A stretch of 64,000 bases of DNA from Selaginella moellendorffii. Taxonomy: Eukaryota; Plantae; Lycopodiophyta. The DNA lies in the NCBI RefSeq assembly GCF_000143415.4, contig NW_003314321.1, forward strand, positions 186,001 through 250,000, given 5' to 3'. Within the stretch, counting starts at the first letter, position 1; every line of letters starts with the position of its first letter. Positions 6,462 to 29,471 of the stretch are shown here, one piece after another. The notes beneath the pieces are model-generated. The model saw only the letters and a program-made list of their open reading frames with translations. It was not told the DNA's origin and did not search any database. The position numbers and the translations under genes are program-made.

Positions 6462-8521
6462 ATGGAGGCCAAGTTTTTGATGTTTCTAGGATCCGTCTTG
6501 TTAGAACACTTCGTGCTACTAGTCCGTGCTCAGAACACCAACATTGAGGCTGCTGGATGTGACCGACTTGCAAGTGCAAGAGATTGCAAAGCAGGCCATC
6601 TTGAATCGCGCGAATGTTTGTGGTGAGGGTCACATTCTAGATCATGTCTATACAAACTTGTGTCATGAAGTCTAAGAATGATTGCTGTGCAGGGAGTCTA
6701 TCGACTTGCTTGCCAGAGACTTGCATCAGGCAACCCTGCAGGCCGCAGTCCCGGGATGAGATCCAGAAGCTCTCATGCATGGGGCTTGCACAGCTTCGGG
6801 AAATGGAACATGTCGCTACGTTAGCGTGTCTAGCGAGAAATCATACATCAGGTTGGTTGTCTCACATCTTTGCTAGTATTTTCTTTTGAGATTTCTTAAA
6901 ACGTCCAGGGTCTCACCCGAGCTGGCTTCCGAGACTGATACTGCTGCGGTCTTGTGCGCTCAGAAACCTCTTGACCACAAATTACAACAGGCCTGCAACA
7001 GCACAACGAATATCTAGGCATTGAAGGCTATTTATACGTTTATCCAAGCCAGGTACAAAGTTTTCGTCTTCCATTTGATTTTAATTCATGAAAGGCATAA
7101 ATAATCTACAGGACTATGCAGACAACGAAAGATGTAACACATATGATCCGAGACGCAGGCCGTGGTACTTGAATGCCTTCGCAGTTCAGAAATCACTCTA
7201 CATTGTTTTGGACAAATCGTTGTCCATGAGCAATCTTGTTGGACCTTTGTCATCCCAAAGCCGTCTGGCCGCTGCCAGAAGCGTTCTTAAGGCACTCCTG
7301 GACACTCTCACGAATGGAGACCAAGTAGCAGTGTCAACGATTAGTGGTGAACCTATTGCCGCTCCAGTAAGATCTTCTAAGTTATCATTCTTCTTAAGGC
7401 TTTGGTTTTGCAGGTTTCAGCCTTGCTTGAAAACCTTGTAACATCATCCAATGCTCTTGGTATTTCGTCCCTCAAGGATGCCATAGCCAAGGTCAAAGGC
7501 GACAATTCACCCAAGGATATCAAGAAAGGTCTTGCTGCGGCCCTTGATTTCTTCAATTCCAGCTCTAACTTAAACGTAAAGATCATCCTCTTTCTTTGTC
7601 TGTCACTAACAGTGCTCGTAATGTAAGGTAATACTTCTCTTCACGGATACTTCAGAGATTTGAATCCACTCTTTGCACAACTCAACGACAAAGGTGTTGT
7701 GGTTTTTTCTACAACGATGCCACTTTCCAGCAGATGCAAGATAACCTCAACATGACTTACGAGGCTGTGAAAGACGAGAAAAATCCCCTGCTCAACATTC
7801 GGAGCTACTTTCATTACATCGCTTGGCTTCGCTTTGTTGCCGTGAACAAAAAGCCTACGTGGGTGCCTGTTTACGTTGATGCCGCCGAGCTTGGAAACGT
7901 GACGAGCTCAATATTCCCAGGTAAACCGGAGCTCCTTTTCTTGTCTTGGTCCTTTGATCATCTGACTACTGCTGTAGCGTTCGATGCAAATCAGCGTTTG
8001 ATCGGAGTTGCATGCATTGACATTATTGCCGAGAAGCTTATCAGCAGGCACGGCAGCGCTGTTGTTCAAGAAGCAGTGTCTAAACGGAGCTTCCATTCTT
8101 CAGAGAATGTGAAGCCTCTCCCTCTCACTCAACCAGTTAAGTCCACAAAACCCCCAGTTTTTCAACTTATCGCTGACATTACCAGTAGGTCTCGAATGCA
8201 ACCATTATCAACTGTGGTTTTACTGGGAAGCTGACTCCCATTTGCCCGCAAAGAGATTTTTCGACACCGATCACAGAGTTCATGTGCTGTGGCGATTGTG
8301 CTGTTTCCAGCACCAATTCTTCGAAGACTTCATTGGCGGTTGGTGCCATTGCTGGTATTTGCGTGGGAGTTCTTGTTCTGGCTGCCGCTGCTGTAGTTCT
8401 CTACTGTAAGTGCTGCAAATCCCCCTCGCCTACCACGAGTGAAACTCTCATCGGGGCTGAACAAGAAGTGTGGGTGACTGGCCCATCGCCGCAGAGGTCG
8501 CCTAATAACACAACTGATTGA
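6462..8521 (+). pseudogene. alpha2delta/CACHD1-like VWA-Cache membrane protein, paralogue A1 (frameshifted)
   Basis: Signal peptide MEAKFLMFLGSVLL..VRAQ; YDPRRRPWY; MIDAS-like DKSLS; WVPVYVDAAELG..LIGVACID; TM helix at about 8335-8405. A 2-bp deletion after NTNIE and internal deletions near 7015 and 7650-7710 relative to the paralogues. Confidence 0.85.
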
Positions 8522-8820
8522 AAGAGAGCCTTGCTTCGTTTACTTCATTTACAACTGAAACTTGGCCCAGCCTGCGATTAAACTCATCAGCAACAATGGA
8601 CAAGTGAATGAACAGTCTAGCCCGGTGTCCAAAAAAATGTAGAAATGTAGTCAGGAGATGTCATCATCAGCCTTTGGGCGATGGTTGGCAATACGTAGAA
8701 GTCCACACGGTTTAGGATAGCTAAATATCAGATAAAAATCAACACGATGGTGGTTCGTGCTTCCAGGAACCAACGAGGGCTTGATAAAATCAACGCCACC
8801 ACTTTTGCAGGTTTGAGCGA

Positions 8821-10985
8821 ATGGAGAGCTCCCTCTTGCTTAGATCCGCCTTTTTAGGAGTCTTGTCTTTGCTGCTAGCAAACGCTCAAGATAACATCGA
8901 AACAGTGCTGAACGAGACCGACTTCCAGGTCCAGCAAATCGCGAATCAAGCAATCTTAAATCGAGCCAATACTTGTGGTAAGCTCTTGAACCTCAAGCTC
9001 AAACAACTTTGTAGAGTATTGTCACTCCAGGAAGTCTATCGGATTGCTCACTCGACACTTGCAAAAGGCGCCCTTGCTGGCCGCAGTCCAAGGATGAGAT
9101 CCAAAAGCTCTCTTGCGTTCCAGTATTGCGCAATGGAGACTGCACGTCTCCGGCAAATGGAACTTGCCAGAGCTTAAGCGTTTCAACTCAAAAAACATAC
9201 CTCAGGTATCTGGCTTGTCAATGTACAGCTTTGACTTGAGATGTTGCTATGATCATCTAGAGTCCCACCCGATCAAGACCCGGAGAAAGATCGAGATTTT
9301 CAGACGGTCTTGTGTGCTCAAAAATCTCTAGACAAGAAGCTACAACAGGCCTGGGATAACACGAAGAAGTTTTCCCTTGGCTGGGCTTTCTTTGGAGGGA
9401 TTGAAGGATACTTGTATGTTTACCCGGGCCGGGTAAGTGTACAATAAGCATTTCTTCCCTGCAAGCGAGAGTTTATGTCTTTATATTGACAGGACTATGT
9501 CGACAGTGGGCAGTGTGATCTTTATGATCCAAGGCTCAGGCCATGGTTTCTCAATACTTTGGCGGTCCAAAAATCGCTCTACATTCTCTTGGACACCTCC
9601 ACTTCCATGAGCAATCCCACTGGAGTTTTATCCTCCCAAACCCGCTTTAATGTTGCAAGTAACATCATTACGCAGCTGCTAAATACCCTCACTAATGGAG
9701 ATCAAGTGGCTGTGTCAACGATCGGTGGTGAGAAAATCGGAGCTCCAGTTAAGTTTTCATCAGAAACTAGGATAATTTCTGATTATGAGGTTCTGAATTC
9801 CAGGTTTCCGTAGTTCTTGACGTCCAGGAAACCTCTTTGTATCTGGCTGGAATCTCATCCCTCAAAGATTCCATAAGCAACACAAGTGTTACAAACTCAG
9901 CCAGTAACATAAAGAATGGGCTGCAAGCAGCACTTGATTTCTTCAACACCAGCTCCAACTTGAATGTAAGATGCTTTTCGTGTGATAATCACAAGAAATC
10001 ACATTGGTTTCTTCAACTTGGCAAATCCCAGGTCATAATCCTCTTCACAGATGGACAGTTTGTCACCCCTGGCAATTTCAACTTCACCCAACTGAGCCCA
10101 GTTTTAGCACAGCTGAACGCGAGAAACGTTGTGGTGTTCGTATACAGAATCGGGTCCTTCACGTCCAACGATGCCACTTTCCAGCAAATGCAGAGCAGCC
10201 TCAACATGAGCTACGAGGTCATCAGTGACGACAAAAACCCACTGCTCAAGATCCACAGCTACTTCGACTACATTGCATGGCTTCGCTTTGTCGCTGTCAA
10301 CAAGAAACCGATTTGGGCGAGTCTGTATGCCGATTCTGCTGGCCTTGGCAATGTCACAACTTCCATCTTTCCAGGTTTGTATAGTACTATTATTTATTCC
10401 TCTGCTTATTTTAATTGCATGCAGCTTTTGATGCAAATCAACAGCTGATTGGAGTTGCATCGATAGATGTTCTTACTGATAGGCTTGTCGCGGAGTTTGG
10501 CCAACCTACAGTTGAGAAAGCTATATCTGAACGATCACACTTTGTTCCTTCACTGCAAAAGCCACTTCCTCTCGCTCAAACAGTTACGTACAAACTTTTG
10601 GAACTTCTATTTTGCTTTTTAGATTGAGAGAACTTTGATTTTGCAGCTCTCCAATGCGACCATCAGCTGTGACTTCCGCGGGAGCCTGGCTCCAATCTGT
10701 CCAAGAGGCGACTTTACCACGCCCATCAGGGATTTTATATGTTGTGGAGCTTGTGCCGCTACAGCCAGTGCTCCTCCTCCTCCTCATCGTTCCCCAAAGA
10801 AGCCAACGGGTAAAGTAATCGCTGGTATCGCTGCGGGCGGAGTTGTCGCCGCTTGTGCCATCTTCGTTTCCGCCGTGTTTTTGTGTCGTAAGTGCCGCAA
10901 ATCTCCAACTGAAAGTGATAATGACCAACCTCAAGAACCGGACTGGTTGGAACCAACGAGATCTCCTCTGAAACAAAACTTGTAA
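8821..10985 (+). CDS. alpha2delta/CACHD1-like type-I membrane protein (VWA domain inserted in a Cache domain), paralogue B1
   Basis: Signal peptide; Cys-rich N-terminus; WAFFGGIEGYLYVYPG; DLYDPRLRPWF; ILLDTSTSMS (MIDAS DxSxS); IILFTDG; WASLYADSAGLGNVTTSIFPAFDANQQLIGVASIDV; Pro linker; TM (VIAGIAAGGVVAACAIFVSAVFL); short tail. No lesion seen across short GT-AG introns. Confidence 0.88.
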
Positions 10986-11599
10986 TCTTATTCCTCGGAC
11001 TCCTTCCGATCTCCAAAACTCGTCTTTTTATATACATACTTTCGCACACAAAACAAGAGCTTTGCTTTAGAACAGAAAGAAAAACTTGAAACACTTACAC
11101 TACCACGAAGAAGAAGAAGAAGCTCTTCAGCTCAAGGGGCCGCCATGGGCGATCGGGGGCGGAAGCTCCTGCTGGATGTGAGCGATGCGAGCGGTTGGCC
11201 ACTCGAGTGACATCTTCCGCAGCGGGCTCTGGAGGTAGACGGCGGCTTTGCGCTTGACCCACTCGGGGTGCTCGATCTCGAACAGCCTTTCCCGGAGGTC
11301 GCGAGTGATACTCACGTTGGGATGGGCTACGTGCTCCCACCAGAACGTCCACACCCCCAGCCCAATGGCGAGCAACACCATTCCCGCCAGAGGAAGCACC
11401 GGAAGGAGTTCTCTGCGAAGGATGTCAGTCGTTACCATCTTCATCCCGTTTTTCCTGCACGGTACCTGGTACACTCTGTGCAGTGGATCCACCTTAGAGG
11501 AAAACGAAAACAAGAAAGAAAACTACCTTCCGCGCTGATGCAAGTATTCGGATGCTGTCTGCCTGTTCATCACACCGGTGTAAGGATTTGGAACAACGT

Positions 11600-11836: not shown

Positions 11837-14800
11837 ATGAACAAGACCCTGGTCATCCTTATCATGGTATCGGAGCACTAGTTTTTCTGGGATGGCTTCA
11901 GACAAAGACGTTTTGGAAGTTTTTGATGGCAGAGATTTCCATGGATGGCGAACTCAGATGCAGTTTTTCTTCATGGAGAAGAACCTTTGGCGGCAGCGAC
12001 AGAGGTTGCACCCGAGAAAGAGTGGAACAGACAAAACACTCAAACACTTAGAATCCTTGGACGCGCAGTGGGAAGATTTATCGGTGTCACCTTGACACGT
12101 CCCTGACAGCCAACAAGAATTGGGAAGCACTAAAGACAGTGCTTGGCCGAACCAACAAGACCAATCTAATTGAGATGAAAACCAAGTTCGGCAGCATGGT
12201 CAAGAAGAAGGATGAGTCCATTCAAGATTATGCAAGTCGTTTGAAGGATACAGCGAAGCAGATCGACACTCTTCAATCTCCCACCAAAGTGGACGACAGT
12301 GACCTTGTCACAGTGTTTCTCAAGGGCATTCCAACAGCGTTTCAACTTGCTGCCTCTGGACATGTGGCCACCAAAACAGGTCGTTAACGAGATGTTAGCA
12401 CTGGAAACCTTGCTAGGAGGATCTCAGTTTCTGGAAGAAATCCCTCGCGATTTGGCTATGTTTGCTGGTTCTAAGGCCAAGGTCTCAATCTGGGACAGGC
12501 TAGGGCCGCGCCAGGAGGATGCTGCCAAAGAACGCAAACAAGAAGGTCAAAACGAGCCAAAGAGAAACAAGAAGCGCAAAAATAACGGTCTCTGTAATAT
12601 CTGTAAAAAGCCAGGACACTTCGCCCGGGACTGTACAGATGACGCGGCCAAGATCCGGAAGGAAATCAGGAAGGGGAAGCAAGTCTCCAATTACACACGA
12701 GCAGAGCAAGACGATGTCACAGATGGTAGCTTGTTCATGGCTCAAGCTGTAGCAGAGTCAAATTCCCTTGCACCCAACACTCCAAGAACAGAGGTGATCT
12801 GGATTGACAGTGGAGCCAATCATCATATGACTCATCTCCAAAGCCTTTTCTCGCATTTAGAAGACGTTCCAGACGGGAAGCGAATTTACCTCGGCGATGA
12901 CTACTCACACAGCGTGTGTGGAGTTCGAGGTTCGACTTGCCACAGGACAGGTTGTAGCAGTCAGTGGAGTCTACTACGTTCCTGGTGTCAAGATGACACT
13001 CTTCTCCGTTGGAAAAATCACAGATCGTGATTGTGAACTTCTCTTTTCCAAGACGCAGTGCACTATAATGTGAGGCGAGTCAGTTATAGCCAGTGGGAGG
13101 CGTTATGCTGGCCTTTACCAGCTGAATGCAGAGGTGGAGTATCCAGTCAAGCCTAGCGAGCAACTTCGTCCTCAGCATGCGGTTGACCTCCAGACATGGC
13201 ATCGCCGGCTTGGTCACACGAATTACCAGGATATTAAACAACTTGCGAGTTCAGGCATGGTTGACGGTCTTCACATCACTTCTCAGAAGCTGAGGTTTTG
13301 TGAGCCGTGCGTTCTCGCAAAGCAGCACAGATTTCCTTTCAAGGCTGGTGCTGCTACAAGAGCTACCGAGATTTTAGAGCTAGTCCACTCTGACGTGTGT
13401 ACGATGCCAGTACTTTCTCGAGACAAGAAGGTCTATTTTGTGACCTTTATAGACGATTATTCCAGGGTGATCGCAGCAAAGTTTCTAGCTCGCAAATCTG
13501 AGGTGATCAATGAGTTCCAGTTTTTTAGAACTCGAGCAGAGTTGCAGACCCGCAAGAAACTGAGGAAATTTCGAAGTGATGGTGGTGGAGAATATGTCTC
13601 TAAAGATTTTATCAAATATTGTGAAGAAGCTGGGATTGAGAGGCAGTATTCAGTTCCAGATACACAGCAACAAAATGGCACAGCTGAGCGAGCCAACCGA
13701 ACGCTCCAGGAAGCAGCTCGCTCCTTATTACGAGATGCTGGTTTGCCCGAGTCCTTTTGGTGTGAAGCTGTTGCAGTCGCAGCTTATCTGCGAAACCGTC
13801 AGATCACATCAGCAGTGAGCGGCGAGACACCATTTGAGATTTGGTATGGCAGAAAACCGGATCTCAGCCATCTTCGAATTTTTGGATGCATAAGGAAGCA
13901 TCGCACCAAGCTTGAAGATTGCAGCGTGAAGGCAGTTCTAGTCGGCAACAGTGATCACATGAAGGCCTACAAGCTCTTCAGTTTGTCCTCATCCAAGATC
14001 TTCCACAGTCGTGATGTGATCTTCGATGAAACACGGACGTATGCAACCAGAAATCTCCCGTGCGCTCTTGATCTTCCAGTCAACGGTCAACGGTTTATGG
14101 TTCTTGACAGTGACGAGGTAGCGCAACTGCAGCTCCAGCAGCAGAATCCAATCAGCCCGTCCCTATAGACGCAGCGGCAAGTGATGCTGAAGCGAGTGGG
14201 AGCTCTCAACCCATCAGCAGGAGGTATTTTTGGCACGGGTGGGAGCGACACTTCAGGCCAGAACGGGACGTCTCCTCCAGTCGGCGGAGAGATCGGCTTA
14301 AGTGGGAGTACTCAGCCTTCACCACAGCCAGTGCTTAGACGGTCTACTCGGATCCGCACACTCACAGAAGCAGGGGCACAATTTCAAGAACGGCTTGACT
14401 TTCAGACTGCCCGCCGAGCTTCTCGGCAGCAAGCTCAAGCTAGGGGACAGCTCCAAGTGGTTCCAACACGTTCTACTATGCAGCAGCTCCTCCAGAAGTG
14501 CAACAGGCGTTTCTGGAATTACCTTCTCCAGTTTTCCAGTTGTTATTTTCTCAAGGCCAAGATATCTTGGTTCCCAAGAAGTTGCGTGAGGCACTCTCCA
14601 GTCCTGAGCGTGAGCAGTGGCAAGCAGCAGCAAATTCTGAGTATTCGTCTCTCATGGAGAATGAGACATGGGACCTGGTCGATCTACCTCCTGGAAGGAA
14701 ACTGGCTTTTTCGAATCAAGACTGGAGCTGATAAGAAACTTCTCAAGTACAAGGCAAGACTTGTACACAGGTTGAGGGCGTGGACTACAATGAAACGTTT

Positions 14801-16233
14801 TCTCCAGTGGTGAAGATGGCCTCTATCCGCTTGTTACTCAATCTTGCAGCCCAGCAGAATTTAGAAGTGGAGCAGCTCGACGTCACCACAGCGTTTCTCT
14901 ATGGCGATCTTGACGAGGAGGTTTATGTCCTTCAGCCAGAAGGATATGTCATCAAAGGCCAGGAACACAAGGTGTGCAAGCTTAAGAAGGCTTTATATGG
15001 ATTAAAGCAGTCTCCACGGCAGTGGTATGCGAAGATGAACATCTATCTACTCTCCATCGGTTTTGTGAGTATTTCAGCATATTCTAATGTTTATCTTCGC
15101 AAGTCAGGTACAATATATATTTATCTTGCACTCTATGTAGACGATTGTCTACTAGTCGGTCCAACTCGCATAGCTTTGCAGCAGCTCAAGCGTGAGCTAC
15201 AGGCACGATTTAAGATGGTGGATCTTGGACCAATGAAATATTGTTTGGGGATCGAGATTATACGCGACAGGCAGGCTGGCATCATACAATTATCTCAGCA
15301 GAAGTATGTTGACGATATCTTGGAGAGCTTTCATCTTGCTGAGCTGAATGAAGCGTCAATTCCTATGGAAGCCGGCCTCCATCTCAGAAAAGATCAAGTC
15401 CCACAAACAGTCGAGGAATGCGAGAAGATGCAGATACCGTACCGTCAGATGGTTGGCAGCTTAGTCTACCTAATGGTCTGCACACGGCCAGATTTAGCTT
15501 TTGCAGTGGGAGCAGTGTCCCAGTTTCTCGAGACTCCAGGACTTCCTCATTGGTTAGCAGTCAAACGTATCTTTCGCTACTTAAAGGGGACCAGACATTT
15601 TGCACTCACGTACTCCAAAGTCTCAGCAGGTATGCAACTGTTTGGCTTCACGGATGCTGACTTTGCAGGCGAGGTTGAGCAGCCGAGATCCACCTCAGGT
15701 TATCTTTAGTCTCGGCAGCGGCGCTCTCACATGGTGCAGCAAGCGACAGTTAATTATAGCGTTATCGTCGACCGAAGCAGAGTATGTTGCAGCTACTCAA
15801 GCAGCTAAGGAATGTTGCTGGCTACGACAGCTCTTGGACGGCATCGGCTATTCTCAGCTAGGGCCAACAGCTATCTTTTGCGATAACCAGGGTGCTATCG
15901 CACTCATGGGCGCGCCAAACATATCCAGGTGCAGTTCCATTATATTCGAGATCAAGTGTGTTTTGGAGCTCATCCATTGTGGAACAACAGAGCAGGTTGC
16001 AGATATTTTTACCAAGGCGTTACCTCCAGCTTTGTTCCAGCGACACGTACACGCACTTGGCGTGAGAGAGAGCACCTTAGTGTTCGAGTGGGAGTGATAC
16101 GAATATGCTGGCATAGCATATTCTCCAGAGCTGTCTAGAGGCGCGGTAGGCAGTTAGGGGACACTAGAGAGAGTAGGGTGTGTTTTTCTTTTGTAGCCTC
16201 TTGTGATGAACAAGACCCTGTTCATCCTTATCA
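11837..16233 (+). mobile_element. Ty1/copia LTR retrotransposon with truncated 5' LTR
   Basis: 5' LTR remnant 11837-11864 matches 16206-16233 at 27/28. PBS TGGTATCGGAGC at 11865-11876 (tRNA-iMet type). PPT GAGTGGGAG, then 3' LTR TGATAC..TTATCA at 16095-16233. Confidence 0.95.
11892..16097 (+). pseudogene. Copia gag-pol polyprotein (frameshifted)
   Basis: Zn knuckle CNICKKPGHFARDC; protease WIDSGANHHMT; WHRRLGH; integrase LVHSDVC/RSDGGGEY/NGTAERANR; RT QLDVTTAFLYG, LYVDD; RNase H TDADFAG/SSTEAEY/ADIFTK. IN precedes RT. Split over several frames. Confidence 0.95.
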
Positions 16234-17476: not shown

Positions 17477-19466
17477 AAGGAGGCCAAGTTTTTGATGTTT
17501 CTAGGATCCGTCTTGTTAGGACACTTCGTGTACTAGTCCGTGCTCAGAACACCAACATTGAGGAGCTGCTGGATGTGACCGACTTGCAAGTGCGGGAGAT
17601 TGCAAAGCAGGCCATCGAATGTTTGTGGTGAGGGTCACGTTCTAGATCATGTCTATGCAAACTTGTGTCATGAAGTCTAAGAATGATTGCTGTGCAGGGA
17701 GTCTATCGACTTGCTTGTCAGGCTGCAATGCAGAGGCAGTCCCAGGATGAGATCCAGAAGCTCTCATGCATTGGTGTACATCAGAATCTAGCTTGCACAG
17801 CTTCGGGAATGGAACATGTCGCTACGTTAGCGTGTCTAGCGAGAGATCATACATCAGGTTGGTTGTCTCACATTTTTGCTAGTATTTTCTTTTGAGATTT
17901 CTTAAAACGTCCAGGGTCTCACCCGAGCTGGCTTCGGAGACTGATACTGCTGCGGTCTTGTGCGCTCAGAAACCTCTTGACCACAAATTACAACAGGCCT
18001 GCAACAGCATCTATGAAGGAAAGGCACTTTTCGGAGGCATAGATAATCGACAGGACTATGCAGACAACGAAAAATGTAACACATATGATCCGAGACGCAG
18101 GCCGTGGTACTTGAATGCCTTGGCAGTTCAGAAATCACTCTACATTGTTTTGGACAAATCGTTGTCCATGAGCAATCTTGTTGGAACTTTGTCATCCCAA
18201 AGCCGTCTGGCCGCTGCCAGAAGCGTTCTTAAGGCACTCCTGGACACTCTCGAATGGAGACCAAGTAGCAGTGTCAACGATTAGTGGTGGACCTATTGCC
18301 GCTCCAGTAATTTAAACGATGATCTTCTAAGTTATGATTCATCTTAAGGCTTTGGTTTTGCAGGTTTCAGTCGTGCTTGAAAACCTTGAAACATCATCCA
18401 ATGCTTCTGGCATTTCGTCCCTCAAGGATGCCATAGCCAAGGTCAAAGTCGACAATTCACCCAAGGATATCAAGAAAGCTCTTGCTGCGGCCCTTGATTT
18501 CTTCAATTCCAGCTCTAACTTAAACGTAAAGATCATCCTCTTTCTTTGTCTGTCACTAACAGTGCTCGTAATGTAAGGTAATACTTACAGTTTGCCAGCA
18601 ATTTTAACTTCACAGATTTGAATCCACTCTTCACAGAACTCAACGACAAAGGTGTTGTGGTTTTCGTCTACAGGATAGGATTCTTCACCTCCAACGATGC
18701 CACTTTCCAGAAGATGCAAGGTAACCTCAACATGACTTACGAGGCTGTGAAAGACGAGAAAAATCCCCTGCTCAACATTCGGAGCTACTTTGATTACATC
18801 GCTTGGCTTCGCTTTGTTGCCGTGAACAAAAAGCCTACGTTGATGCCGCCGAGCTCGGAAACGCGACGAGCTCAGGTAAACCGGCGCTCCTTTTCTTGTC
18901 TTGGTCCTTTGATCATCTGATTACTGCTGTAGCGTTCGATGCAAATCAGCGTTTGATCGGAGTTGCATGCATTGACATTATTGCCGAGAAGCTTATCAGC
19001 AGGCACGGCAGCGCTGCTGTTCAAGAAGCAGTGTCTAAACGGAGCTTCCATTCTTCAGAGAATGTGAAGCCTTTCCCTCTCACTCAACCAGTTAAGTCCA
19101 CAAAACCCCCAGCTTTTCAACTTATCGCTGACATTACCAGTAGGTCTCGAATGCAACCATTATCAACTGTGGTTTTACTGGGAAGCTGACTCCCATTTGC
19201 CCGCAAAGAGATTTTTCGACACCGATCACAGAGTTCATGTGCTGTGGCGATTGTGCTGTTGCCAGCACCAATTCTTCGAAGACTTCATTGGCAGTTCTGG
19301 TATTTGCGTGGGAGCGGCAGTTCTTGTTCTGGCTGCCGCTGCTGTAGTTTTCTACTGTAAGTGCTGCAAATCCCCCTTGCCTGCCACGAGTGAAACTCCC
19401 ATCGGGGCTGAACAAGAAGTGTGGGTGACTGGCCCGCAGAGGTCGCCTAATAACATAACTGGTTGA
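17477..19466 (+). pseudogene. alpha2delta/CACHD1-like paralogue A2 (start codon lost, frameshifts)
   Basis: ATG of A1 is AAG here; 1-bp deletion near 17530; 2-bp deletion near 18250; deletions near 18840-18875. Retains YDPRRRPWY and DKSLS. Confidence 0.85.
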
Positions 19467-19786
19467 AAGAGAGCCTTGCTTTGTTTGTTTCATTTACAAC
19501 TGAAACTCAAAACTCATCAGCAACAATGGATTTCGTCCCTTAAAAAGCCAATGGAAGTGAATGACTGGTGTCCAAAAACATGTAGAAATGTCGTAAATGT
19601 CATCATCAGATGGCGTAAAAGTCCACACGGTTTAGGATAGGTTTGATATGGTTCCTAAAAATCAACACGATGGTGCTTCCAGCCTCCATTGCGGAATACT
19701 GGAAGGCAGAACTTCTGGAATGGTGCTTCCAGGAACGAATGAGAGCTTGATAAAATTAACGCCACCACTTTTGCAGGTTTGAGCGA

Positions 19787-21951
19787 ATGGAGAGCTCCCT
19801 CGTGCTTAGATTTGCCTTTTTAGGTGTCTTGTCTTTGCTGCTAGCAAACGCTCAAGATAACATCGAAACAGTGCTGGACGAGACCGATTTCCAGGTCCAG
19901 GCAATCGCGAATCAAGCAATCTCAAATCGAGCCAATACTTGTGGTAAGCTCTTGAACCTCAAGCTCAAACAACTTTGTAGAGTATTGTCACTCCAGGAAG
20001 TCTATCGGATTGCTCACTCGACACTTGCAAAAGGCGCCCTTGCTGGCCGCAGTCCAAGGATGAGATCCAAAAGCTCTCTTGCGTTCCAGTATTGCGCAAT
20101 GGAGACTGCACGTCTCCGGCAAATGGAACTTGCCAGAACTTAAGCGTTTCAACTCAAAAAACATACCTCAGGTATCTAGTTTGTCAATGTACAGCTTTGA
20201 CTTGAGATGTTGCTATGGTCATCTAGAGTCCCACCCGATCAAGACCCGGAGAAAGATCGAGATTTTCAGACGGTCTTGTGTGCTCAAAAATCTCTAGACA
20301 AGAAGCTACAACAGGCCTGGGATAACACGAAGAAGTTTTCCCTTGGCTGGGCTTTCTTTGGAGGGATTGAAGGATACTTGCATGTTTACCCGGGCCGGGT
20401 AAGTGCACAATAAGCATTTCTTCCCTGCAAGCGAGAGTTTATGTCTTTATATGACAGGACTATGTCGACAGTGGGCAGTGTGATCTTTATGATCCAAGGC
20501 TCAGGCCATGGTTTCTCAATACTTTGGCGGTCCAAAAATCGCTCTACATTCTCTTGGACACCTCCACTTCCATGAGCAATCCCACTGGAGTTTTATCCTC
20601 CCAAACCCGCTTTAATGTTGCAAATAACATCATTAAGCAGCTGCTAAACACCCTCACTAATGGAGATCAAGTGGCTGTGTCAACGATCGGTGGTGAGAAA
20701 ATCGGAGCTCCAGTTAAGTTTTTCATCAGAAACTAGGATAACTTCTGATCATGAGGTTCTGAATACCAGGTTTCCGTAGTTCTTGACGTCCAGGAAACCT
20801 CTTTGGATCTTGCTGGAATCTCATCCCTCAAAGATTCCATAAGCAACACAAGTGTTGGAAACTCAGCCAGTAACATAAAGAATGGGCTGCAAGCAGCACT
20901 TGATTTCTTCAACTCCAGTTCCAACTTGAATGTAAGATGCTTTTCGTGTGATAATCACAAGAAATCACATTGGTTTCTTCAACTTGGCAAATCCCAGGTC
21001 ATAATCCTCTTCACAGATGGACAGTTTGTCACCCCTGGCAATTTCAACTTGACCCAACTGAGCGCAGTTTTGGCACAGCTGAACGCGAGAAACGTTGTGG
21101 TGTTCGTCTACAGAATCGGGTCCTTCACGTCCAACGACAGTGCCGCTTTCCAGCAAATGCAGAGCAGCCTCAACATGAGCTACGAGTTCATCAGTGACGA
21201 CAAAAACCCGCTGCTCAAGATCCACAGCTACTTCGACTACATTGCATGGCTTCGCTTTGTCGCCGTCAACAAGAAACCAGTTTGGGCGAGCTTGTATGCC
21301 GATTCTGCTGGCCTTGGCAATGTCACAACTTCCATCTTTCCAGGTTTGTATAATACTATTATTTATTACTCTGCTTCTTCTTAGTAATTATTTTAACTTC
21401 ATGCAGCTTTTGATGCAAATCAACAGTTGATTGGAGTTGCATCGATAGATGTTCTTGCTGATGGGCTTATCGCGAAGCTTGGCCAGCCTACGGTTGAGAA
21501 AGCTTTATCTCAACGATCCTTTCCTCCACAGCAAAAGCCTCTTCCTCTCGCTCGAACAGTTACGTGGAACTTCGATTTTGCTTTTTAGATTGAGAGAACT
21601 TTGATTTTGCAGCTCTCCAATGCGACCATCAGCTGTGACTTCCGTGGGAGCCTGGCTCCAATCTGTCCAAGAGGCGACTTTACCACGCCCATCAGGGATT
21701 TTATATGTTGTGGAGCTTGTGCCGCTACAGCCACTGCTTCTCCTCCTCCTCCTCGTCCCGCAAAGAAGGGAACGAGCAAAGTAATCGCTGGTATCGCTGC
21801 GGGCGGAGTTGTCGCCGCTTGTGCCATCTTCGTTTCCGTCGTGTTTTTGTGTCGCAAGTGCCGCAAATCTCCAACTGAAAGCGATAATAACCAACCTCAA
21901 GAACCGGACTGGTTGCAACCAACGAGATCTCCTCTGAAACAAAACTTGTAA
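19787..21951 (+). CDS. alpha2delta/CACHD1-like type-I membrane protein, paralogue B2
   Basis: Same exon structure and motifs as B1 (YDPRLRPWF, DTSTS, FTDG, LYAD..GVASID, TM). Only in-frame differences seen. Confidence 0.88.
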
Positions 21952-22089
21952 TCTTATTCCTCGGACTCCTTCAGATCTCCAAAACTCGTCTTTTTATATA
22001 CATACTTTCGCACACAAAACAAGAGCTTTGCTTTAAAACAGAAAGAAAAACTTGAAAGACTTACACTACCACGAAGAAGAAGAAGCTCT

Positions 22090-22678
22090 TCAGCTCAAGG
22101 GGCCGCCATGGGCGATCGGGGGCGGAGGCTCCTGCTGGATGTGAGCGATGCGAGCGGTTGGCCACTCGAGTGACAACTTCCGCAGCGGGCTCTGGAGGTA
22201 GACGGCGGCTTTGCGCTTGACCCACTCGGGGTGCTCGATCTCGAACAGCCTCTCCCGGAGGTCGCGAGTGATGCTCACGTTGGGATGGGCTACGTGCTCC
22301 CACCAGAACGTCCACACCCCCAGCCCAATGGCGAGCAACACCATTCCCGCCAGAGGAAGCACCGGAAGGAGCTCTCTGCGGAGGATGTCGGTCGTTACCA
22401 TCTTCATCCCGTTTTTCCTGCACGGTACCTGGTACACTCTGTGCAGTGGATCCACCTTTAGGGAAATCGAAAACAAGGAAGAAAGAAAACTACCTTCCGC
22501 GCTGATGCAAGTACTCGGATGCTGTCTGCCTCTTCATCACACCAGCGTCGCCAGTGTAAGGATTTGGAACAACGTCTTCAGGGCGCTTGATCCTCGTACT
22601 GGTAGCACCATTTCTCCAGCTTGGAGCCCCCACTGCTGCTGCACTCTTCTTGGCAACACCACGGATCAAACGCTGCAT
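22090..22678 (-). CDS. B12D / NDUFA4-like single-TM protein with a mitochondrial-presequence-like N-terminus
   Basis: Two exons (intron GTAG..CACAG, about 55 bp). ELLPVLPLAGMVLLAIGLGVWTFWWEHVAHPNVSITRDLRERLFEIEHPEWV..SPLRK..IAHIQ follows the plant B12D-like pattern. Confidence 0.65.
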
Positions 22679-23185: not shown

Positions 23186-24019
23186 TTACTCGGCCCACCA
23201 GAGGGCGATCTGCTTGCGGCGCTTGATCTTCTTCTGGAGCTGGAGGAGACCGTAGAGAAGCGCCTCGGCGGTGGGCGGACACCCGGGGACGTAGATATCC
23301 ACTGGGACAATCCGGTCACAACCGCGAACCACAGCGTACGAGTAATGGTAGTAGCCACCGCCATTCGCACAGCTTCCCATCGAGACCACCCAGCGCGGCT
23401 CGGGCATTTGATCGTAGACCCTGCACGTAGAAAACTATCAGTTGACGCAAGGAAAGAACGCTCAAGAACTTTGGAAAGAACTCCACACCGACACAAAGAA
23501 CAATGGAGATCTTCACGACAAAGAACAACGAAGATCTTCACACCGACACAAAGAACAATGGAGATCTTCACGACAAAGAACAACGAAGATCTTCACACCG
23601 ACTCAAGGCAAAGAGAAGGAAACTAAAAAGGAAGAGAGAAAAACCAAGTACCTGCGAAGAGCTGGAGCCATCTTGTTGGTGAGAGTCCCAGCCACGATCA
23701 TGCAATCCGACTGCCTGGGGCTGGGACGGAAGATCATTCCAAACCTATCCAAGTCGTAGCGCGCGGCTCCAGTGTGCATCATCTCCACGGCGCAGCACGC
23801 CAGGCCGAAAGTCATGGGCCAGATCGATCCCGCTCGCACATAATTGATCACGGAATCGAGCTTGGAGATGACGAAATTCGCCAGGCCGGAGGATTCCCCG
23901 CTGCTGCTGGATGTGGCATAATCCGCCCTGCTGATCGCCGGCAAGCTGCTCTTGAGAAGATTTGACCTCGCCGCGGTGCTGGACACCGCCATTCGAGCTG
24001 CCCTGGGAAGCAGCGCCAT
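23186..24019 (-). CDS. NDUFS7: NADH:ubiquinone oxidoreductase 20-kDa PSST subunit, mitochondrial
   Basis: [44 protein letters not shown]. One intron at 23421-23651. Confidence 0.98.
23484..23602 (+). repeat. 55-bp tandem repeat (about 2.1 copies) in the PSST intron
   Basis: CACACCGAC starts at 23484, 23539 and 23594. Confidence 0.9.
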
Positions 24020-24225
24020 AGCTGCCGCTGCGTTGAGAGGGAGAGGGCAAAGATCACAAACGATGCCAAGGCGATGGAGGTGCGTACCTCGAAGAAGACG
24101 GTGCGCTGCACAAACCCTAGCTCTCGTGTTTTACCCTTTAAGAACTCAGCCAACCACAACGCGCCACGTGTTCATATAGTTTTGTGCCCTAATTCCATTT
24201 TCTAGGGCTTCTGGGCAGGAAGGAA
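24020..24225. promoter_or_regulatory. Compact bidirectional promoter (telo-box, G-box)
   Basis: 206 bp between divergent ATGs; AAACCCTAG at about 24112; GCCACGTG at about 24163. Confidence 0.55.
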
Positions 24226-25184
24226 ATGTATCATCCATCGCGCGGAGGCGTCCGGGGAGGCCGCGATCGTAAGTAGTCTATGCTTGATCGATCATCAATC
24301 TCTGAATTGGCGGTGGCGCAGAGTTTAATTGGGACGATGTCAAGGTCGATAAGCATCGAGAGAATTACCTGGGCCACAGCGTCAAAGCTCCAGTGGGACG
24401 CTGGCAAAGAGGTATCTATTCCATTCCACTCTTCCTTTGGCGATCAGACTCCTCCATTCCATTCCCATTGTTTCCTTTGGCGATCAAACTCATTCTTTCA
24501 TTGTTTCCTAACTCTTCTCTCTTGATTTTTTTTTGCTTCTTCCAGGCAAAGATTTGACATGGTACGCAAAGGGAGGAGGATTGGCCGACGCTGCCGCGAA
24601 GGCAGAGATCGAGAGAATCAAAGCCGAGGAAGATCAAGCAATGCGCGAGGCCTTGGGCTTGGCTCCTACTCGAGACAAACGCAACCAAGTCAATCGTCTC
24701 GACAAACACGAGCTGGAGGAGCTTTTGAAGCCTGGAAAAACTGCCGAGGAGCTCTCCGAGACTTACACTGCAGCGGAACGAATCCAAGGACTTGGGTTTG
24801 GACCGTAAGTTTGCTCCCTACCCTTCTCGTGTCACGCGCTCACTGTCGGTTTCCCTGCGCAGTACAGCAGCAAGTAAGAAACAACGAGGCTACGAACGGG
24901 GAGAACAATTGGCGGGGATACAACCGGAGAAGCTCGCAACCAGTGAACCAGCTGCAACCTCTACAGATGGTGGCAAGAGGAGCAGCAAAGAAGAAACTAA
25001 GGAGCGGAGGAGGCAGGAGAAGAACGCTCGCAAAGAGGAGAGAAAAGCGGCTAAACTCGCACGCAAGGAAGAAAGGCGGCACCAAAAGGAGCTCAAGCGA
25101 AGATCATCCGGGAAAGACGAGGATCGAGACGAGGACGAGCAGCAGCACTCAAAGAGGCAGCGACACGATTCAGACTCGGATTAA
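24226..25184 (+). CDS. Multiple myeloma tumor-associated protein 2 homolog (MMTAG2-like)
   Basis: [14 protein letters not shown]|[30 protein letters not shown]|GKDLTWYAK; K/R/E-rich C-terminus ending RHDSDSD. Four exons. Confidence 0.92.
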
Positions 25185-26870
25185 AAGCGTGAGAAAACGG
25201 AGATAGAGAGAGAGAGAGGTACTTACTTGCTTCTTTGCGTTTATCAGCAAAACTTTGCGTTGCGTGATTTACTCAGAGCGATCGCTGCGCGCACGATGTG
25301 GGACCTTGAGTAAATCTTCTATCTGTAACGGCTGCTCGCTAGCTGGCGGCTGTGCTGCCGGTTACGAGGAAGACGAATGACATGGCTGTGGGCGTCAGTC
25401 CCGGCAGGTCTAACGGATGCCCCCACATTCGGCGACAAAACAAAACCCGACGCGGAGTGTCGTACTCCTTCCCCGGCCCCTTCCGTACGTGTTTGTTGTG
25501 CTTATCTTCCTATTATTCGCTCTTGTGTGCTCTTGTGTGCCATGGCAGATTATCTGAGGTCGTAGTACCAAGATCTGGAACACAGCTAGTCAGTAAAAGA
25601 GAGATTTTTAAGCATCAAACTGGGAGAATCTTACTCGAGATCGAAACCACCACCACCATGGTCGTTTGTCGGCACTAGGAGCTCTGCTGCGAAGGTAAAA
25701 AATTGAAGAATCGGCCGCACGCAACGCCATTTGTGAGAGAAGACCCCACACCGTTCTAATTCTGGTACCTGTTGCAATAGCGGGGTACCTTTCTCTGTCG
25801 CGCCTCTGTGGTTTCTGTCTTGCTTCTAGCTCGTCGTTCCTTGTTTGAGAGCACCAATGCATGCATCCAGCCAGCTAGCCAGTGTGGTTTTTTCAACGTT
25901 TAACTAGCACCACGATCAACACAGCAAGCAATGAATGAGCGCCCGTAAAGACAAAGAAAAAACAGAGCTCACTCACTCAATGTTTAGTCGTTCAGCGCAG
26001 GTTACCAACCTCCAGCACGCACATCAAACACAAGTCTTTTGTTATCTCGTAGAGCAGAAAAACACAAGTTACCGCTTGTGTCGCCCCGTCGGTTTGTTGT
26101 CTTAGCACCTAATTACCTTTGTCGCTGTCGGCTGTCTCACTATCGAATGAGATCACAGGATGGTAATCCGGGACCGATCGGAAAACTCGTAAACTTCTCT
26201 GTGGGAAAACGTATGATTAGTAGATGATCAGCCAAATGATAGAAAGAATTTCCACACCTACTTCGTTGGACTGGTCGCATTCGAAACCATGCTTTTCGCT
26301 TTATCGCAACCAACCTGAAAGTGAGATTTTTCACCCCTTTTTTCCACCATTTCCCTCTTTTTGCTTTTGTCCCTGCTCGCGTATGTTTGCTTGTTTGATT
26401 GTTTGCTTGCTTGATATCCCCCCTGCTGCAACTTTGCCTTTGTCTGTAAGATGATCCACCTGGAAGGAGGCAGCCAACTTAATCATCTCCTTGAATGTTT
26501 TGCGTGTCTTGTGGGACCTAGATTCGCCATCACCCCCTGTCTGAGGCGCCCGATTTCCTGCTTGATCTCTCCCTCGTCCCTGTGCCACGATTGGCTCTGC
26601 TTTTATGAGCAAAGGCCAGGATATAGGCACGCTCTTTTCTTGTGAGCTCCCTTGTTCCCACCTCCACAAGCTTATATATTTATCGTCTCCTGCTTTCGAG
26701 CACCCTGTCTGCTGCTACTCTTTCCAAGAACACTCTTGAAATTCCCCGCGCCAATCGCTAGAGAGAAGCTCTTGTTCTTGTTCTTGTTCGTTTGCCTTGT
26801 TTGTGCTTCGAGAGAACCTGGAATGCTCTTAAGCCTCCTGCATTTTCACGTTGTTTCCCCGTCTGACGGT

Positions 26871-27425
26871 ATGGAGTACGGAAGAAATCTTCATAGGACC
26901 AGCAAAGGCTCTCACACCATCCTCAAGTCGATCTCTCCTTCTTCTTCGCCTTCTAGCAGCAGCAGCAGTAGCAGCAGCAGCACTAGTAGTAGCGATGGCA
27001 GTGATGGTCATTCTGAGCGTCCCCCAAGGCACCGCGTGCCGGTCATTAGAGTAGTTCACATCTTCAATCCCACTGTCATAAAGACGGACGCCGCCAATTT
27101 TCGATCTCTGGTTCAGGAGCTCACTGGCAGAAGTTGCAGCAACGATACCAAAGTCGGCACTGTTCGATCGAAGTCCCGGCAGAGCTGTGCTTCCGTCCCC
27201 GAGCCAGAGTCCAACAGAATCCTGGTGCCGCCTCATATTCTCAAGTTGTCCATGAATACGCCCCCAAGAAGAAATCCCATCTACATCCCAGAGAGGCTCG
27301 GCACTTTCAGCGACATCGACATAATGTCCAGCTTTCAAGAGCCCGTCATGGACTTGAGCAGTATGCTGCCATCTCTCGGTGGTATGGAGATCAACGACGA
27401 AGGCTTACCAAGATTTTCCTTTTGA
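26871..27425 (+). CDS. VQ-motif-containing protein
   Basis: IKTDAANFRSLVQELTG (FxxhVQxhTG); Ser-rich; intronless. Start codon uncertain. Confidence 0.9.
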   Translation: MEYGRNLHRTSKGSHTILKSISPSSSPSSSSSSSSSSTSSSDGSDGHSERPPRHRVPVIRVVHIFNPTVIKTDAANFRSLVQELTGRSCSNDTKVGTVRSKSRQSCASVPEPESNRILVPPHILKLSMNTPPRRNPIYIPERLGTFSDIDIMSSFQEPVMDLSSMLPSLGGMEINDEGLPRFSF

Positions 27426-27638
27426 GGCCCAGCTTGTGTCTGCAAGCACCGATTCACAGTCTCAGTCGGGGAGATATAGCAAAAGCTTAGTGAAAAATCT
27501 TTGCCTTTCTTTCTTTGTGTTTTTCCTCACCAGTTTTTGATCATAATGCAAAGTCAGCTTGCTTTCTGTTACGAGTTCTTCCACATTCGTATCATCTATA
27601 GTAAGTGTTAAAACAGAAGAGCTCATTAGATTCAAGGT

Positions 27639-28801: not shown

Positions 28802-29471
28802 CTCGCTCGCCCTGCCCTAAAATAAATTTGCATATTCTCATAGATGCTTTGTGCAGAGAATGTACGCTTCACATGGCAGGAAAGATCCCAGTGAGTGGTA
28901 AACCAGCTGGATCGGTTGAAATAGCGACGCGCGCGACGCGACCAGTTGTAACAAAACTCGAAGAAACATGACCGTTATCCTGACGTGGCGGTCCGCAGGC
29001 GGTCCGGGTTCGATCCTCGGCGCTGCCAGATTTCTTTCCTGTTCCTCTCGCGAAAAAGAAAAAGATGGGGGAGGGAACAACCGAAGGAGCGCTTGAATAG
29101 AGTCTCTAGGGTTTTGACATTTTCGGACAAGGCGACCGCGAAGGAATGCGATGATCCTGATCCTCTTCTAGGCGATCGTCATCGCGCATTCTCCGGCCGC
29201 GTCGCGCAAGCGCTAGGGGGATAGGTAGCGGGGGGGATTAGGATTATCGCGCATCGGCGGCAGCGACGATCGATCGATCGATAGCGCCGAGCGATCAGTG
29301 GATCAAGTCAATGTAGCAGGAGAAGCCCGAAATATTCCATTATGCTGTCAGGATCGCGACGACGATGAAAATCGATGCCGCAATATCGGTGAGTGAGAGA
29401 TCTTCCCCTTTTAGATCGCTGCCGCCCCCTTTATGGTCTGATTCCCCTCTGTTTTGGTCACCGGCCAGGAG

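What the first reader, a model, noticed from the sequence alone, without database searches (positions are those of the whole stretch)
8821..10985. Plant alpha2delta/CACHD1-like receptor-like protein retaining the split amino-acid-binding Cache motif
Seen: YDPRLRPWF before the VWA domain and Y-x29-D (LYAD...GVASID) after it, a MIDAS DTSTS/TDG, a signal peptide, one TM, juxtamembrane Cys and a ~30-aa tail with no kinase. Established: YxxxxRxWY...Y..D is the dCache_1 amino-acid-sensing motif, split by a VWA insertion in animal Ca-channel alpha2delta subunits (the leucine/gabapentin site). Flowering plants lack canonical Cav channels. Inference: a compact cell-surface amino-acid/GABA sensor needing a co-receptor or modulating another channel. 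To my knowledge such proteins are functionally uncharacterised in plants.
Basis: partly seen in the sequence, partly recalled or inferred. Interest (0 to 1): 0.78.

Follow-up and report, generated by a model that had tools for sequence, protein, structure and literature searches.

The report
Spikemoss alpha2delta-like Cache-VWA membrane protein
This is a real, intact gene of the spikemoss Selaginella moellendorffii for a cell-surface protein built like the ligand-binding front part of the animal calcium-channel subunit alpha2delta, with the amino-acid-binding residues kept. The protein class was already reported in non-flowering plants in 2022, and its function in plants is still untested.

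Summary
Window 8821-10985 (+) is an 8-exon, GT-AG gene of Selaginella moellendorffii (scaffold GL377625.1), already annotated there as a 586-aa VWA protein.

**Features confirmed**
- Signal peptide and a Cys-rich region.
- YDPRLRPWF, followed by a VWA domain with DTSTS...TDG.
- LYAD...GVASID (Y-x29-D).
- One TM helix and a 32-aa tail with no kinase.

**Homology**
- A family profile hits alpha2delta-1 at E 2.4e-49 and CACHD1 at E 7e-25.
- An AlphaFold model of the 97%-identical allele matches alpha2delta-1 at Z 31, against about 20 for VWA-only folds.
- The motif residues align with alpha2delta-1 Y236, R241, W243 and D491.
- R, W and the third Y are invariant in all the land-plant relatives aligned (liverworts, mosses, Psilotum, Cryptomeria).
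- Moss relatives carry the same ectodomain on a Ser/Thr kinase.

**What is not new**
- Gumerov et al. 2022 reported VWA-split dCache_1AA proteins in Archaeplastida, absent from angiosperms.
- RefSeq names a paralogue 'alpha-2/delta-4'.
- This scan reached the same reading three times on other DNA of this genome.

**Differences from alpha2delta**
- It has only one Cache module.
- Land plants have no Cav channel for it to serve.

Ligand binding, partner and expression are untested. Verdict: a new member of a known kind, of moderate interest.

The parts
8821..8977 (+). Exon 1: start codon, signal peptide (aa 1-22, ANA|Q) and the start of the long N-terminal stalk helix
   Evidence: 100% identical to P0045 aa 1-52. 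The AF2 model has a helix at aa 2-49.
9031..9205 (+). Exon 2: Cys-rich insert (6 Cys) between the stalk helix and the Cache module
   Evidence: Conserved Cys columns in the family alignment. Low pLDDT at aa 61-103.
9261..9432 (+). Exon 3: N-terminal half of the Cache (PDC) module (helices and a beta-hairpin)
   Evidence: Aligned to alpha2delta-1 residues from about 160 onward. AF2 helices at 122-145 and strands at 153-165.
9493..9747 (+). Exon 4: N-part of the AA_motif, YDPRLRPWF (nt 9523-9549), then the start of the VWA domain with MIDAS DTSTS (nt 9592-9606)
   Evidence: Pfam VWA_2 E 2e-6. phmmer hits alpha2delta-1 at E 7e-4 over YDVRRRPWY...DVSGS.
9804..9965 (+). Exon 5: middle of the VWA domain, including the Ser that aligns with the MIDAS Thr of alpha2delta-1
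10032..10374 (+). Exon 6: end of the VWA domain (MIDAS TDG, nt 10047-10055) and re-entry into the Cache module, with Tyr406 of LYAD (nt 10326-10328)
   Evidence: Tyr406 is invariant in the 16-sequence alignment.
10425..10582 (+). Exon 7: last Cache strand, with Asp436 of GVASID (nt 10466-10468), and two helices
   Evidence: Aligned to alpha2delta-1 GVMGVD (D491 rat/human, D493 rabbit). AF2 strand at 429-438.
10647..10985 (+). Exon 8: Cys-rich juxtamembrane stalk (5 Cys), TM helix (nt 10815-10886), 32-aa cytoplasmic tail (nt 10887-10982), stop codon
   Evidence: KD 2.47. AF2 helix at 534-559 in P0045 numbering. No kinase or other domain found.
19787..21951 (+). Paralogue B2: an intact copy with the same 8 exons, equal to RefSeq XP_024544886.1 (P0036)
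   Evidence: tblastn 91-98% per exon. The locus is identical to the window. dN/dS against B1 is 0.53.
6553..8521 (+). Paralogue A1 (motif YDPRRRPWY). It has frame breaks in the exon 3 and exon 6 equivalents and is probably a pseudogene.
17503..19435 (+). Paralogue A2 (96-98% nt identity to A1). It has frame breaks in the exon 4 and exon 6 equivalents. It is annotated as the partial protein P0004.

Best explanation
**Shown.** The gene encodes a 586-aa type I plasma-membrane or secretory-pathway glycoprotein of Selaginella moellendorffii. Its ectodomain is homologous to the front part of animal alpha2delta/CACHD1. The layout is:
- a long stalk helix;
- one Cache (PDC) module, interrupted by a VWA domain with a complete DxSxS...S...D metal site;
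- Cys-rich segments, one TM helix and a 32-aa tail without any catalytic domain.

The five ligand-contacting residues of the dCache_1 amino-acid motif are present (Y179, R184, W186, Y406, D436). They are in register with the leucine/gabapentin site of alpha2delta-1.

**Inferred mechanism.**
- The Cache pocket binds a small molecule carrying an alpha-amino (or amino) group and a carboxylate, that is, an amino acid or a GABA-like compound from the apoplast.
- The VWA metal site clamps an acidic residue of a partner membrane protein.
- With no output domain of its own, the protein would work as a receptor-like protein. Ligand occupancy would change its association with, or its trafficking of, a partner.
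- The most likely partner is a receptor kinase, because moss homologues have the same ectodomain fused directly to a Ser/Thr kinase. A non-Cav channel is less likely.
For: **Gene model and annotation:**

**Homology**
- Exon 4 alone against PDB hits alpha2delta-1 at E 7e-4.
- The family profile against PDB gives alpha2delta-1 E 2.4e-49 over residues 160-502 and CACHD1 E 7e-25. It also gives weak hits to bacterial dCache_1 sensors on both sides of the VWA: PctA, PctB, Tlp3, a diguanylate cyclase and a histidine kinase.

**Fold**
- AF2 core pLDDT is about 85.
- Foldseek: alpha2delta-1 E 4e-21, CACHD1 E 2e-13.
- VIA-align: Z 31 (rmsd 4.2 A, 399 aligned) and Z 26, against about 20 for VWA-only chains.

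**Motif conservation**
- R, W and Y3 are invariant in the plant members.
- D is kept in most members.
- Arg, which is lost in amine-binding Cache domains, is kept here.

**Receptor use of the ectodomain**
- Physcomitrium proteins of 928 and 966 aa carry it in front of a Pkinase domain.
- metaRLK 2.0 lists a bryophyte 'VWA' RLK family.

**Extracellular location:** signal peptide, 8 N-glycosylation sequons and 14 Cys.
Against: - No binding, localisation, partner or expression data exist here.
- The distances between pocket residues in the model could not be measured, so the pocket is inferred from alignment register plus the global fold match.
- The residue equivalent to PctA Y129 is Phe. This is conservative, and that position does not contact the ligand.
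- No membrane-proximal PDC module is predicted. The bacterial piston-type transmission may therefore not apply (low pLDDT at 473-540).
- dN/dS between the two intact copies in the window is only moderately below 1 (0.53, from few substitutions).
- Two neighbouring copies are decayed, so the family is turning over.
- In alpha2delta-1 the pocket ligand may act as a folding or trafficking cofactor rather than as a signal.
Confidence: 0.45

Rival explanations
1. Scaffold or adhesion protein. The VWA metal site is the working part. It holds a partner membrane protein or an acidic cell-wall component. The Cache pocket is structural, or is constitutively filled by an abundant amino acid as a folding or trafficking cofactor, not as a signal.
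For: - The DxSxS...S...D MIDAS is complete in all Selaginella copies.
- alpha2delta-1 and CACHD1 act through protein-protein contacts. The top fold-search hits are entries of alpha2delta-1 in Cav channel complexes, and entry 8s7c is titled 'Ternary Complex of Cachd1, FZD5 and LRP6'.
- The protein has no output domain.
Against: - Bryophyte relatives have a degenerate MIDAS (mostly DxGxS) but keep R, W and Y3 of the pocket. Across the family, the pocket is therefore the better-conserved site.
- The same ectodomain sits on kinases in mosses, which suggests a sensing role.
Confidence: 0.25
2. Sensor for a ligand that is not a proteinogenic amino acid or GABA. Candidates include another carboxylate- or amine-bearing metabolite, a microbial compound or a peptide terminus. 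The protein might then serve as an immune-type receptor-like protein in a fast-evolving tandem family.
For: - The gene sits in a tandem, recently duplicated array with dead copies.
- Selaginella paralogues form a lineage-specific clade (100/100).
- dN/dS is relaxed at 0.53.
- Cache pockets are known to change specificity (PMC10104139).
Against: - All five AA_motif contact residues are present.
- According to Gumerov et al., the motif was predictive for amino-acid binding in tested bacterial domains.
Confidence: 0.2
3. A non-functional or decaying gene copy with no present role.
For: - The neighbouring A1 and A2 copies carry frame breaks.
- No expression evidence could be obtained.
Against: - B1 has eight intact exons with canonical splice sites, no stop codon, and all motif residues.
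- A 97.3%-identical allele or paralogue is equally intact.
- Exons 2-6 show fewer non-synonymous than synonymous changes per site.
Confidence: 0.07

Closest known systems
Animal voltage-gated calcium-channel subunit alpha2delta-1 (CACNA2D1; e.g. PDB 7mix_D, 8fd7_D, 6jp5_F)
   Same: [quoted passage not shown]
- YxxxxRxW(Y/F) before the VWA and Y...D after it, in register with Y236, R241, W243, Y452 and D491/493.
- MIDAS DxSxS and TDG.
- Profile E 2.4e-49, VIA Z 31.
   Different: - Only about 586 aa against about 1100.
- The match covers alpha2delta-1 residues 160-502 only.
- No second dCache_1 domain, no proximal module detected and no delta peptide.
- A real TM helix with a 32-aa tail.
- Extra Cys-rich segments.
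- The host has no Cav alpha1 channel (PMC4202318).
CACHD1 (PDB 8s7c_A, 9eq6_A)
   Same: - Type I membrane protein with a VWA-Cache ectodomain and a cytoplasmic tail.
- Its solved complexes are with FZD5 and LRP6, not with a Cav channel (entry titles).
- Profile E 7e-25, Z 25-26.
   Different: [quoted passage not shown] Here it is in the VWA-split module, as in alpha2delta.
- CACHD1 has two dCache_1 domains.
Bryophyte VWA-type receptor-like kinases (Physcomitrium patens XP_024373479.1 = P0037; XP_024368104.1 = P0052); Gumerov's 'Streptophyta dCache_1AA-VWA Ser/Thr kinase'
   Same: - Homologous ectodomain with the same Cys pattern, the same Cache-VWA-Cache order and the R/W/Y/D residues.
- Same land-plant clade (95/92).
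   Different: - The Selaginella protein ends 32 aa after the TM helix and has no kinase.
- Its MIDAS is complete, whereas the moss RLK forms have DxGxT or DxGxQ.
Bacterial dCache_1AA chemoreceptor sensor domains (PctA 5ltx/5t7m, PctB, Tlp3 4xmq)
   Same: - The Y121/R126/W128/Y144/D173 motif.
- The family profile gives weak direct hits to both halves (E 1e-4 to 1e-8).
   Different: - Bacterial domains have no VWA insertion.
- They have a membrane-proximal module.
- They are followed by a cytoplasmic signalling domain.

Membership tests
Eukaryotic VWA-split dCache_1 proteins (alpha2delta/CACHD1 superfamily) | VWA domain inserted inside the Cache distal module, between the N- and C-parts of the AA_motif | tested here: met
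   Order in the model is Cache half (109-191), VWA (195-375), Cache half (377-460). The profile aligns colinearly to alpha2delta-1 160-502.
Eukaryotic VWA-split dCache_1 proteins (alpha2delta/CACHD1 superfamily) | Significant sequence and fold similarity to alpha2delta-1 and CACHD1 beyond the VWA domain alone | tested here: met
   E 2.4e-49 and 7e-25. Z 31 and 26, against about 20 for VWA-only chains.
alpha2delta proper (Cav auxiliary subunit) | Two dCache_1 domains, one nested in the other | tested here: not met
   The protein is 586 aa. There is no second match region in the PDB profile search. The model has only one Cache module.
alpha2delta proper (Cav auxiliary subunit) | Association with a four-domain Cav alpha1 subunit | not testable with these tools
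   Literature only: Cav alpha1 is lost in all extant land plants (PMC4202318).
alpha2delta proper (Cav auxiliary subunit) | alpha2/delta cleavage and C-terminal GPI-type anchoring | tested here: not met
   The C-terminus has a 24-aa TM helix followed by a 32-aa hydrophilic tail. No delta region aligns. Cleavage itself is not testable.
dCache_1AA amino-acid sensor (Gumerov et al. 2022) | Residues equivalent to PctA Y121, R126, W128, Y144 and D173 | tested here: met
   Y179, R184, W186, Y406 and D436. The Y129 equivalent is Phe, a non-contact aromatic position.
dCache_1AA amino-acid sensor (Gumerov et al. 2022) | The motif residues line one pocket in 3D | not testable with these tools
This is inferred from alignment register and the global superposition on gabapentin-bound 8fd7_D (Z 29.3).
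dCache_1AA amino-acid sensor (Gumerov et al. 2022) | Double (distal plus membrane-proximal) PDC architecture of dCache_1 | tested here: inconclusive
   No proximal module appears in the model. Residues 473-540 have pLDDT below 50 and are only about 70 aa and Cys-rich.
dCache_1AA amino-acid sensor (Gumerov et al. 2022) | Match to a Pfam Cache model | tested here: not met
   Only VWA models hit P0001 and the exons. The homologue P0022 reaches PF22673 MCP-like_PDC_1 at 27.1 bits (cut-off 27). P0031 and P0026 fall below the cut-off.
dCache_1AA amino-acid sensor (Gumerov et al. 2022) | Binds amino acids | not testable with these tools
   Needs thermal shift or ITC.
VWA domain with MIDAS | DxSxS, Thr and Asp metal-coordinating residues | tested here: met
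   D202-T-S204-T-S206, S287 (in place of Thr) and D314. Pfam VWA E 3e-11 on P0001.
Plant VWA receptor-like kinase family (bryophytes) | Homologous ectodomain | tested here: met
Plant VWA receptor-like kinase family (bryophytes) | Cytoplasmic Ser/Thr kinase domain | tested here: not met
   The tail is 32 aa with no Pkinase hit. The protein is therefore a receptor-like protein, not an RLK.

The most novel reading that the evidence does not exclude
Non-flowering land plants keep a minimal, single-module alpha2delta-type receptor that senses apoplastic amino acids or GABA through the same pocket that binds leucine and gabapentin in humans. It signals through a partner receptor kinase or a non-Cav channel. 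This would be an amino-acid perception route separate from GLR channels, and one that angiosperms lost.
Probability: 0.3. Interest if true: 0.7.

Novelty: new member of a known kind. Interest (0 to 1): 0.35.

Why it matters
If the pocket really binds amino acids, this would be the first Cache-type extracellular amino-acid receptor shown in plants.

It would also show what alpha2delta-like proteins do in an organism that has no Cav channel. That bears on the ancestral, channel-independent role of this drug-target family.

The compact single-module ectodomain would be a convenient model for biochemistry and crystallography of the gabapentin-type pocket.

As things stand, this is an annotated but uncharacterised member of a class already described computationally in 2022. 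The value lies in the experiment, not in the sequence discovery.

Tried and rejected
- **Joined protein never submitted.** Each exon was searched by reference. The stored RefSeq proteins P0045 (97.3% identical, colinear) and P0036 (the window's own B2 product) served as full-length proxies.
- **Word-indexed searches were weak.** The search for homologous proteins with P0001 and with the alignment returned almost only Selaginella paralogues, because 8000 candidates saturated the search. The exhaustive HMMER run with exon 6 was the productive one.
- **Exact look-up failed.** The look-up of encoding contigs for P0001 found no exact record.
- **Supplements not held.** The supplementary tables of Gumerov et al. 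are not held. I could not confirm whether these exact Selaginella accessions are in their Dataset S3.
- **Pfam on single exons** gave only VWA hits, plus noise on the TM region (DAP10, protocadherin), which I rejected as TM-composition matches.
- **One PDB hit rejected.** The PDB hit of exon 6 to an antibody heavy-chain construct is a short repeated chance match.
- **'Calcium-channel subunit' rejected.** This is the RefSeq name of a paralogue. There is no second dCache_1 domain, no delta peptide, and no Cav channel in land plants.
- **Tree left unrooted.** The tree does not resolve whether kinase-less or kinase-fused forms came first, and no rooting test was done.
Full report
**Method note.** Every exon was searched by reference. 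Full-length analyses used stored database proteins returned by the tools.

**1. The observation**

The region is eukaryotic and split by short introns. From the sequence and the splice-site positions, the gene has eight exons on the + strand:
- 8821-8977
- 9031-9205
- 9261-9432
- 9493-9747
- 9804-9965
- 10032-10374
- 10425-10582
- 10647-10985

All introns are GT-AG. The CDS is 1761 nt, giving 586 aa.
- a signal-type N-terminus (MESSLLLRSAFLGVLSLLLANA|QD);
- YDPRLRPWF (aa 179-187);
- DTSTS (202-206);
- TDG (313-315);
- LYAD, then 29 residues across the exon 6/7 junction, then GVASID (Y406, D436);
- a Cys-rich juxtamembrane stretch;
- one strongly hydrophobic segment (aa 531-554, Kyte-Doolittle mean 2.47);
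- a 32-aa tail with no domain hit.

There are 14 ectodomain cysteines and 8 N-x-S/T sequons, as expected for an extracellular domain.

The model is independently confirmed in two ways:
- The window is identical to Selaginella moellendorffii scaffold GL377625.1 from position 186001. The genome annotation calls a 586-aa VWA product ending at window 10985.
- The RefSeq protein P0045 (LOC9663133, on another scaffold) is colinear with every exon at 97.3% identity, with the three split codons falling exactly at the junctions.

**2. What it is**

Sequence evidence:
- Pfam sees only the VWA domain (VWA_2 E 2e-6 on exon 4; VWA E 3e-11 on the full-length paralogue P0001).
- Exon 4 alone finds alpha2delta-1 in the PDB at E 7e-4. 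It aligns CDLYDPRLRPWF...LLDTSTS with KIDLYDVRRRPWY...LVDVSGS.
- An exhaustive HMMER search with exon 6 returned 35 proteins.
- A profile of 16 of these relatives (alignment A1) hits alpha2delta-1 at E 2.4e-49 over residues 160-502, and CACHD1 at E 7e-25.
- The same profile weakly hits bacterial dCache_1 sensor domains on both sides of the VWA: PctA, PctB, Tlp3, a diguanylate cyclase and a histidine kinase.

In that alignment the family's W..Y.D matches alpha2delta-1 WTNVYLD, and GVagiD matches GVMGVD. These are Y452 and D493 in rabbit numbering, and D491 in the numbering of Gumerov et al., who mutated R241 and D491.

Structure evidence:
- An AlphaFold2 model of P0045 with A1 as the alignment has mean pLDDT 68.9, but about 85 over residues 105-470.
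- Its layout is:
  - helix, 2-49;
  - a low-confidence Cys-rich loop, 61-103;
  - Cache half, 109-191;
  - VWA, 195-375;
  - Cache half, 377-460;
  - a low-confidence Cys-rich stretch, 473-540;
  - TM helix, 534-559.
- Foldseek ranks alpha2delta-1 first (E 4e-21) and CACHD1 next (E 2e-13).
- VIA-align gives Z 31 (rmsd 4.2 A, 399 residues) and Z 26, against about 20 for VWA-only chains. The match therefore includes the Cache part and the helix.

**3. Family and distribution**

Named relatives come from:
- liverworts (Marchantia, two Riccia species);
- mosses (Physcomitrium, Ceratodon);
- Selaginella;
- Psilotum;
- gymnosperms (Cryptomeria, Ginkgo).

No angiosperm appeared among the named hits. 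This agrees with Gumerov et al. 2022.

The land-plant proteins form a supported clade (95/92). Lineage-specific groups include all Selaginella copies together (100/100) (midpoint root only).

Two Physcomitrium members (928 and 966 aa) carry the same ectodomain in front of a Ser/Thr kinase. This is the 'VWA' receptor-like-kinase family that metaRLK 2.0 calls bryophyte-specific, and the 'Streptophyta kinase' architecture of Gumerov et al.

Across the plant members:
- Arg, Trp and the third Tyr of the motif are invariant.
- The Asp is kept in most.
- The first Tyr alternates with Phe.
- The Selaginella copies keep a full DxSxS MIDAS, while most bryophyte copies have DxGxS.

**4. Local context**

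The window holds four copies:
- A1 (about 6553-8521);
- B1 (the finding);
- A2 (about 17503-19435);
- B2 (19787-21951).

The A-B pair is duplicated at a spacing of about 10.96 kb with 96-98% nucleotide identity. A Copia-type retroelement lies between the two pairs.

B2 is intact and equals RefSeq XP_024544886.1. A1 and A2 carry frame breaks and look like pseudogenes.

B1 against B2 gives dN/dS 0.53 from 23 synonymous and 41 non-synonymous differences. Most non-synonymous changes fall in exons 7 and 8.

**5. How it most likely works**

*Shown:*
- a type I membrane protein with an alpha2delta-type Cache-VWA ectodomain;
- an intact amino-acid motif;
- a complete metal site;
- no catalytic tail.

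*Inferred:*
- The pocket binds an amino-acid-like ligand. The carboxylate-binding Arg, which is not conserved in amine-binding Cache domains, is kept. The Phe at the PctA Y129 position replaces a structural aromatic residue that does not contact the ligand.
- The VWA metal site holds an acidic residue of a partner.
- Signalling needs that partner, most plausibly a receptor kinase, given the fused forms in mosses.

A Cav channel cannot be the partner, because land plants have lost Cav alpha1.

I put about 0.95 on the identity and about 0.45 on the full mechanism. The rivals are:
- a VWA-driven scaffold with a cofactor-type pocket;
- a different small ligand in a fast-turning-over, possibly immune-type family;
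- a decaying copy.

**6. Comparison and novelty**

The protein is like alpha2delta-1 in the VWA-split motif and fold. It differs in four respects:
- one Cache module instead of two nested dCache_1 domains;
- no detectable proximal module;
- no delta peptide;
- a true TM helix with a tail.

I therefore file it in the wider VWA-split Cache class and not as a calcium-channel subunit, although RefSeq names a paralogue 'alpha-2/delta-4 isoform X2'.

The class, including its presence in Archaeplastida, single-module forms, kinase fusions in Streptophyta and absence from angiosperms, was published in 2022. No paper in the held library reports any functional test in plants.

This scan has already reached the same reading on three other stretches of this genome. 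I reached it independently before looking.

**Verdict:** This is a new member of a known kind, of moderate interest, and the interest rests on an experiment that has not been done.

Noticed in passing
window 6553-8521 and 17503-19435: These are two A-type paralogues carrying the exact alpha2delta-1-like YDPRRRPWY motif. Both have frame breaks, in the exon 3 and exon 6 equivalents of A1 and the exon 4 and exon 6 equivalents of A2, and look like pseudogenes. A2 is annotated as the partial 449-aa protein P0004, which skips the broken parts.
   Followed up: partly
window 6600-11400 vs 17600-22364: The A-B gene pair, plus about 400 bp downstream, is a segmental duplication at a spacing of about 10.96 kb with 96-98% nucleotide identity. 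Introns 1 and 5 of B1 and B2 are 100% identical, which may reflect gene conversion.
   Followed up: partly
window 11900-16100: A Copia-type LTR retroelement (gag Retrotran_gag_2, zinc knuckle, Pol_BBD, and further ORFs up to 16097) lies between the two gene pairs.
   Followed up: partly
window 19670-19790 (P0036 N-terminus): The RefSeq model of B2 has a 21-aa N-terminal extension (MVLPASIAEYWKAELLEWFER). It repeats the C-terminal residues of the A2 model P0004. This is probably an annotation artefact, and the signal-peptide Met at 19787 is the likely true start.
   Followed up: no
P0052/P0053 (Physcomitrium) and P0047 (Selaginella): The database names are misleading. The moss Cache-VWA receptor kinase is named 'receptor-like protein kinase THESEUS 1'. 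A 588-aa Selaginella paralogue is named 'voltage-dependent calcium channel subunit alpha-2/delta-4 isoform X2'.
   Followed up: partly
window 10887-10982 (tail) and homologues P0047, P0027: The short cytoplasmic tails share an acidic-Trp-[LV] element (PDWLEP, DDWVIP, EHWLAN) and juxtamembrane Cys residues (CRKC). This could be a short docking motif or a palmitoylation site.
   Followed up: no
alignment A1 /: The MIDAS is complete (DxSxS) in Selaginella, in the unnamed ENA and JGI proteins and in the nematode alpha2delta. It is mostly DxGxS in bryophytes and Psilotum. Cryptomeria has TNG instead of TDG.
   Followed up: partly
L001 13517-22282 (window about 23200-31950): The genes annotated downstream carry these Pfam domains: Oxidored_q6, MMtag, VQ, ABC_tran and GINT1_N/Glyco_transf_64. 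They appear unrelated to the Cache-VWA cluster.
   Followed up: no
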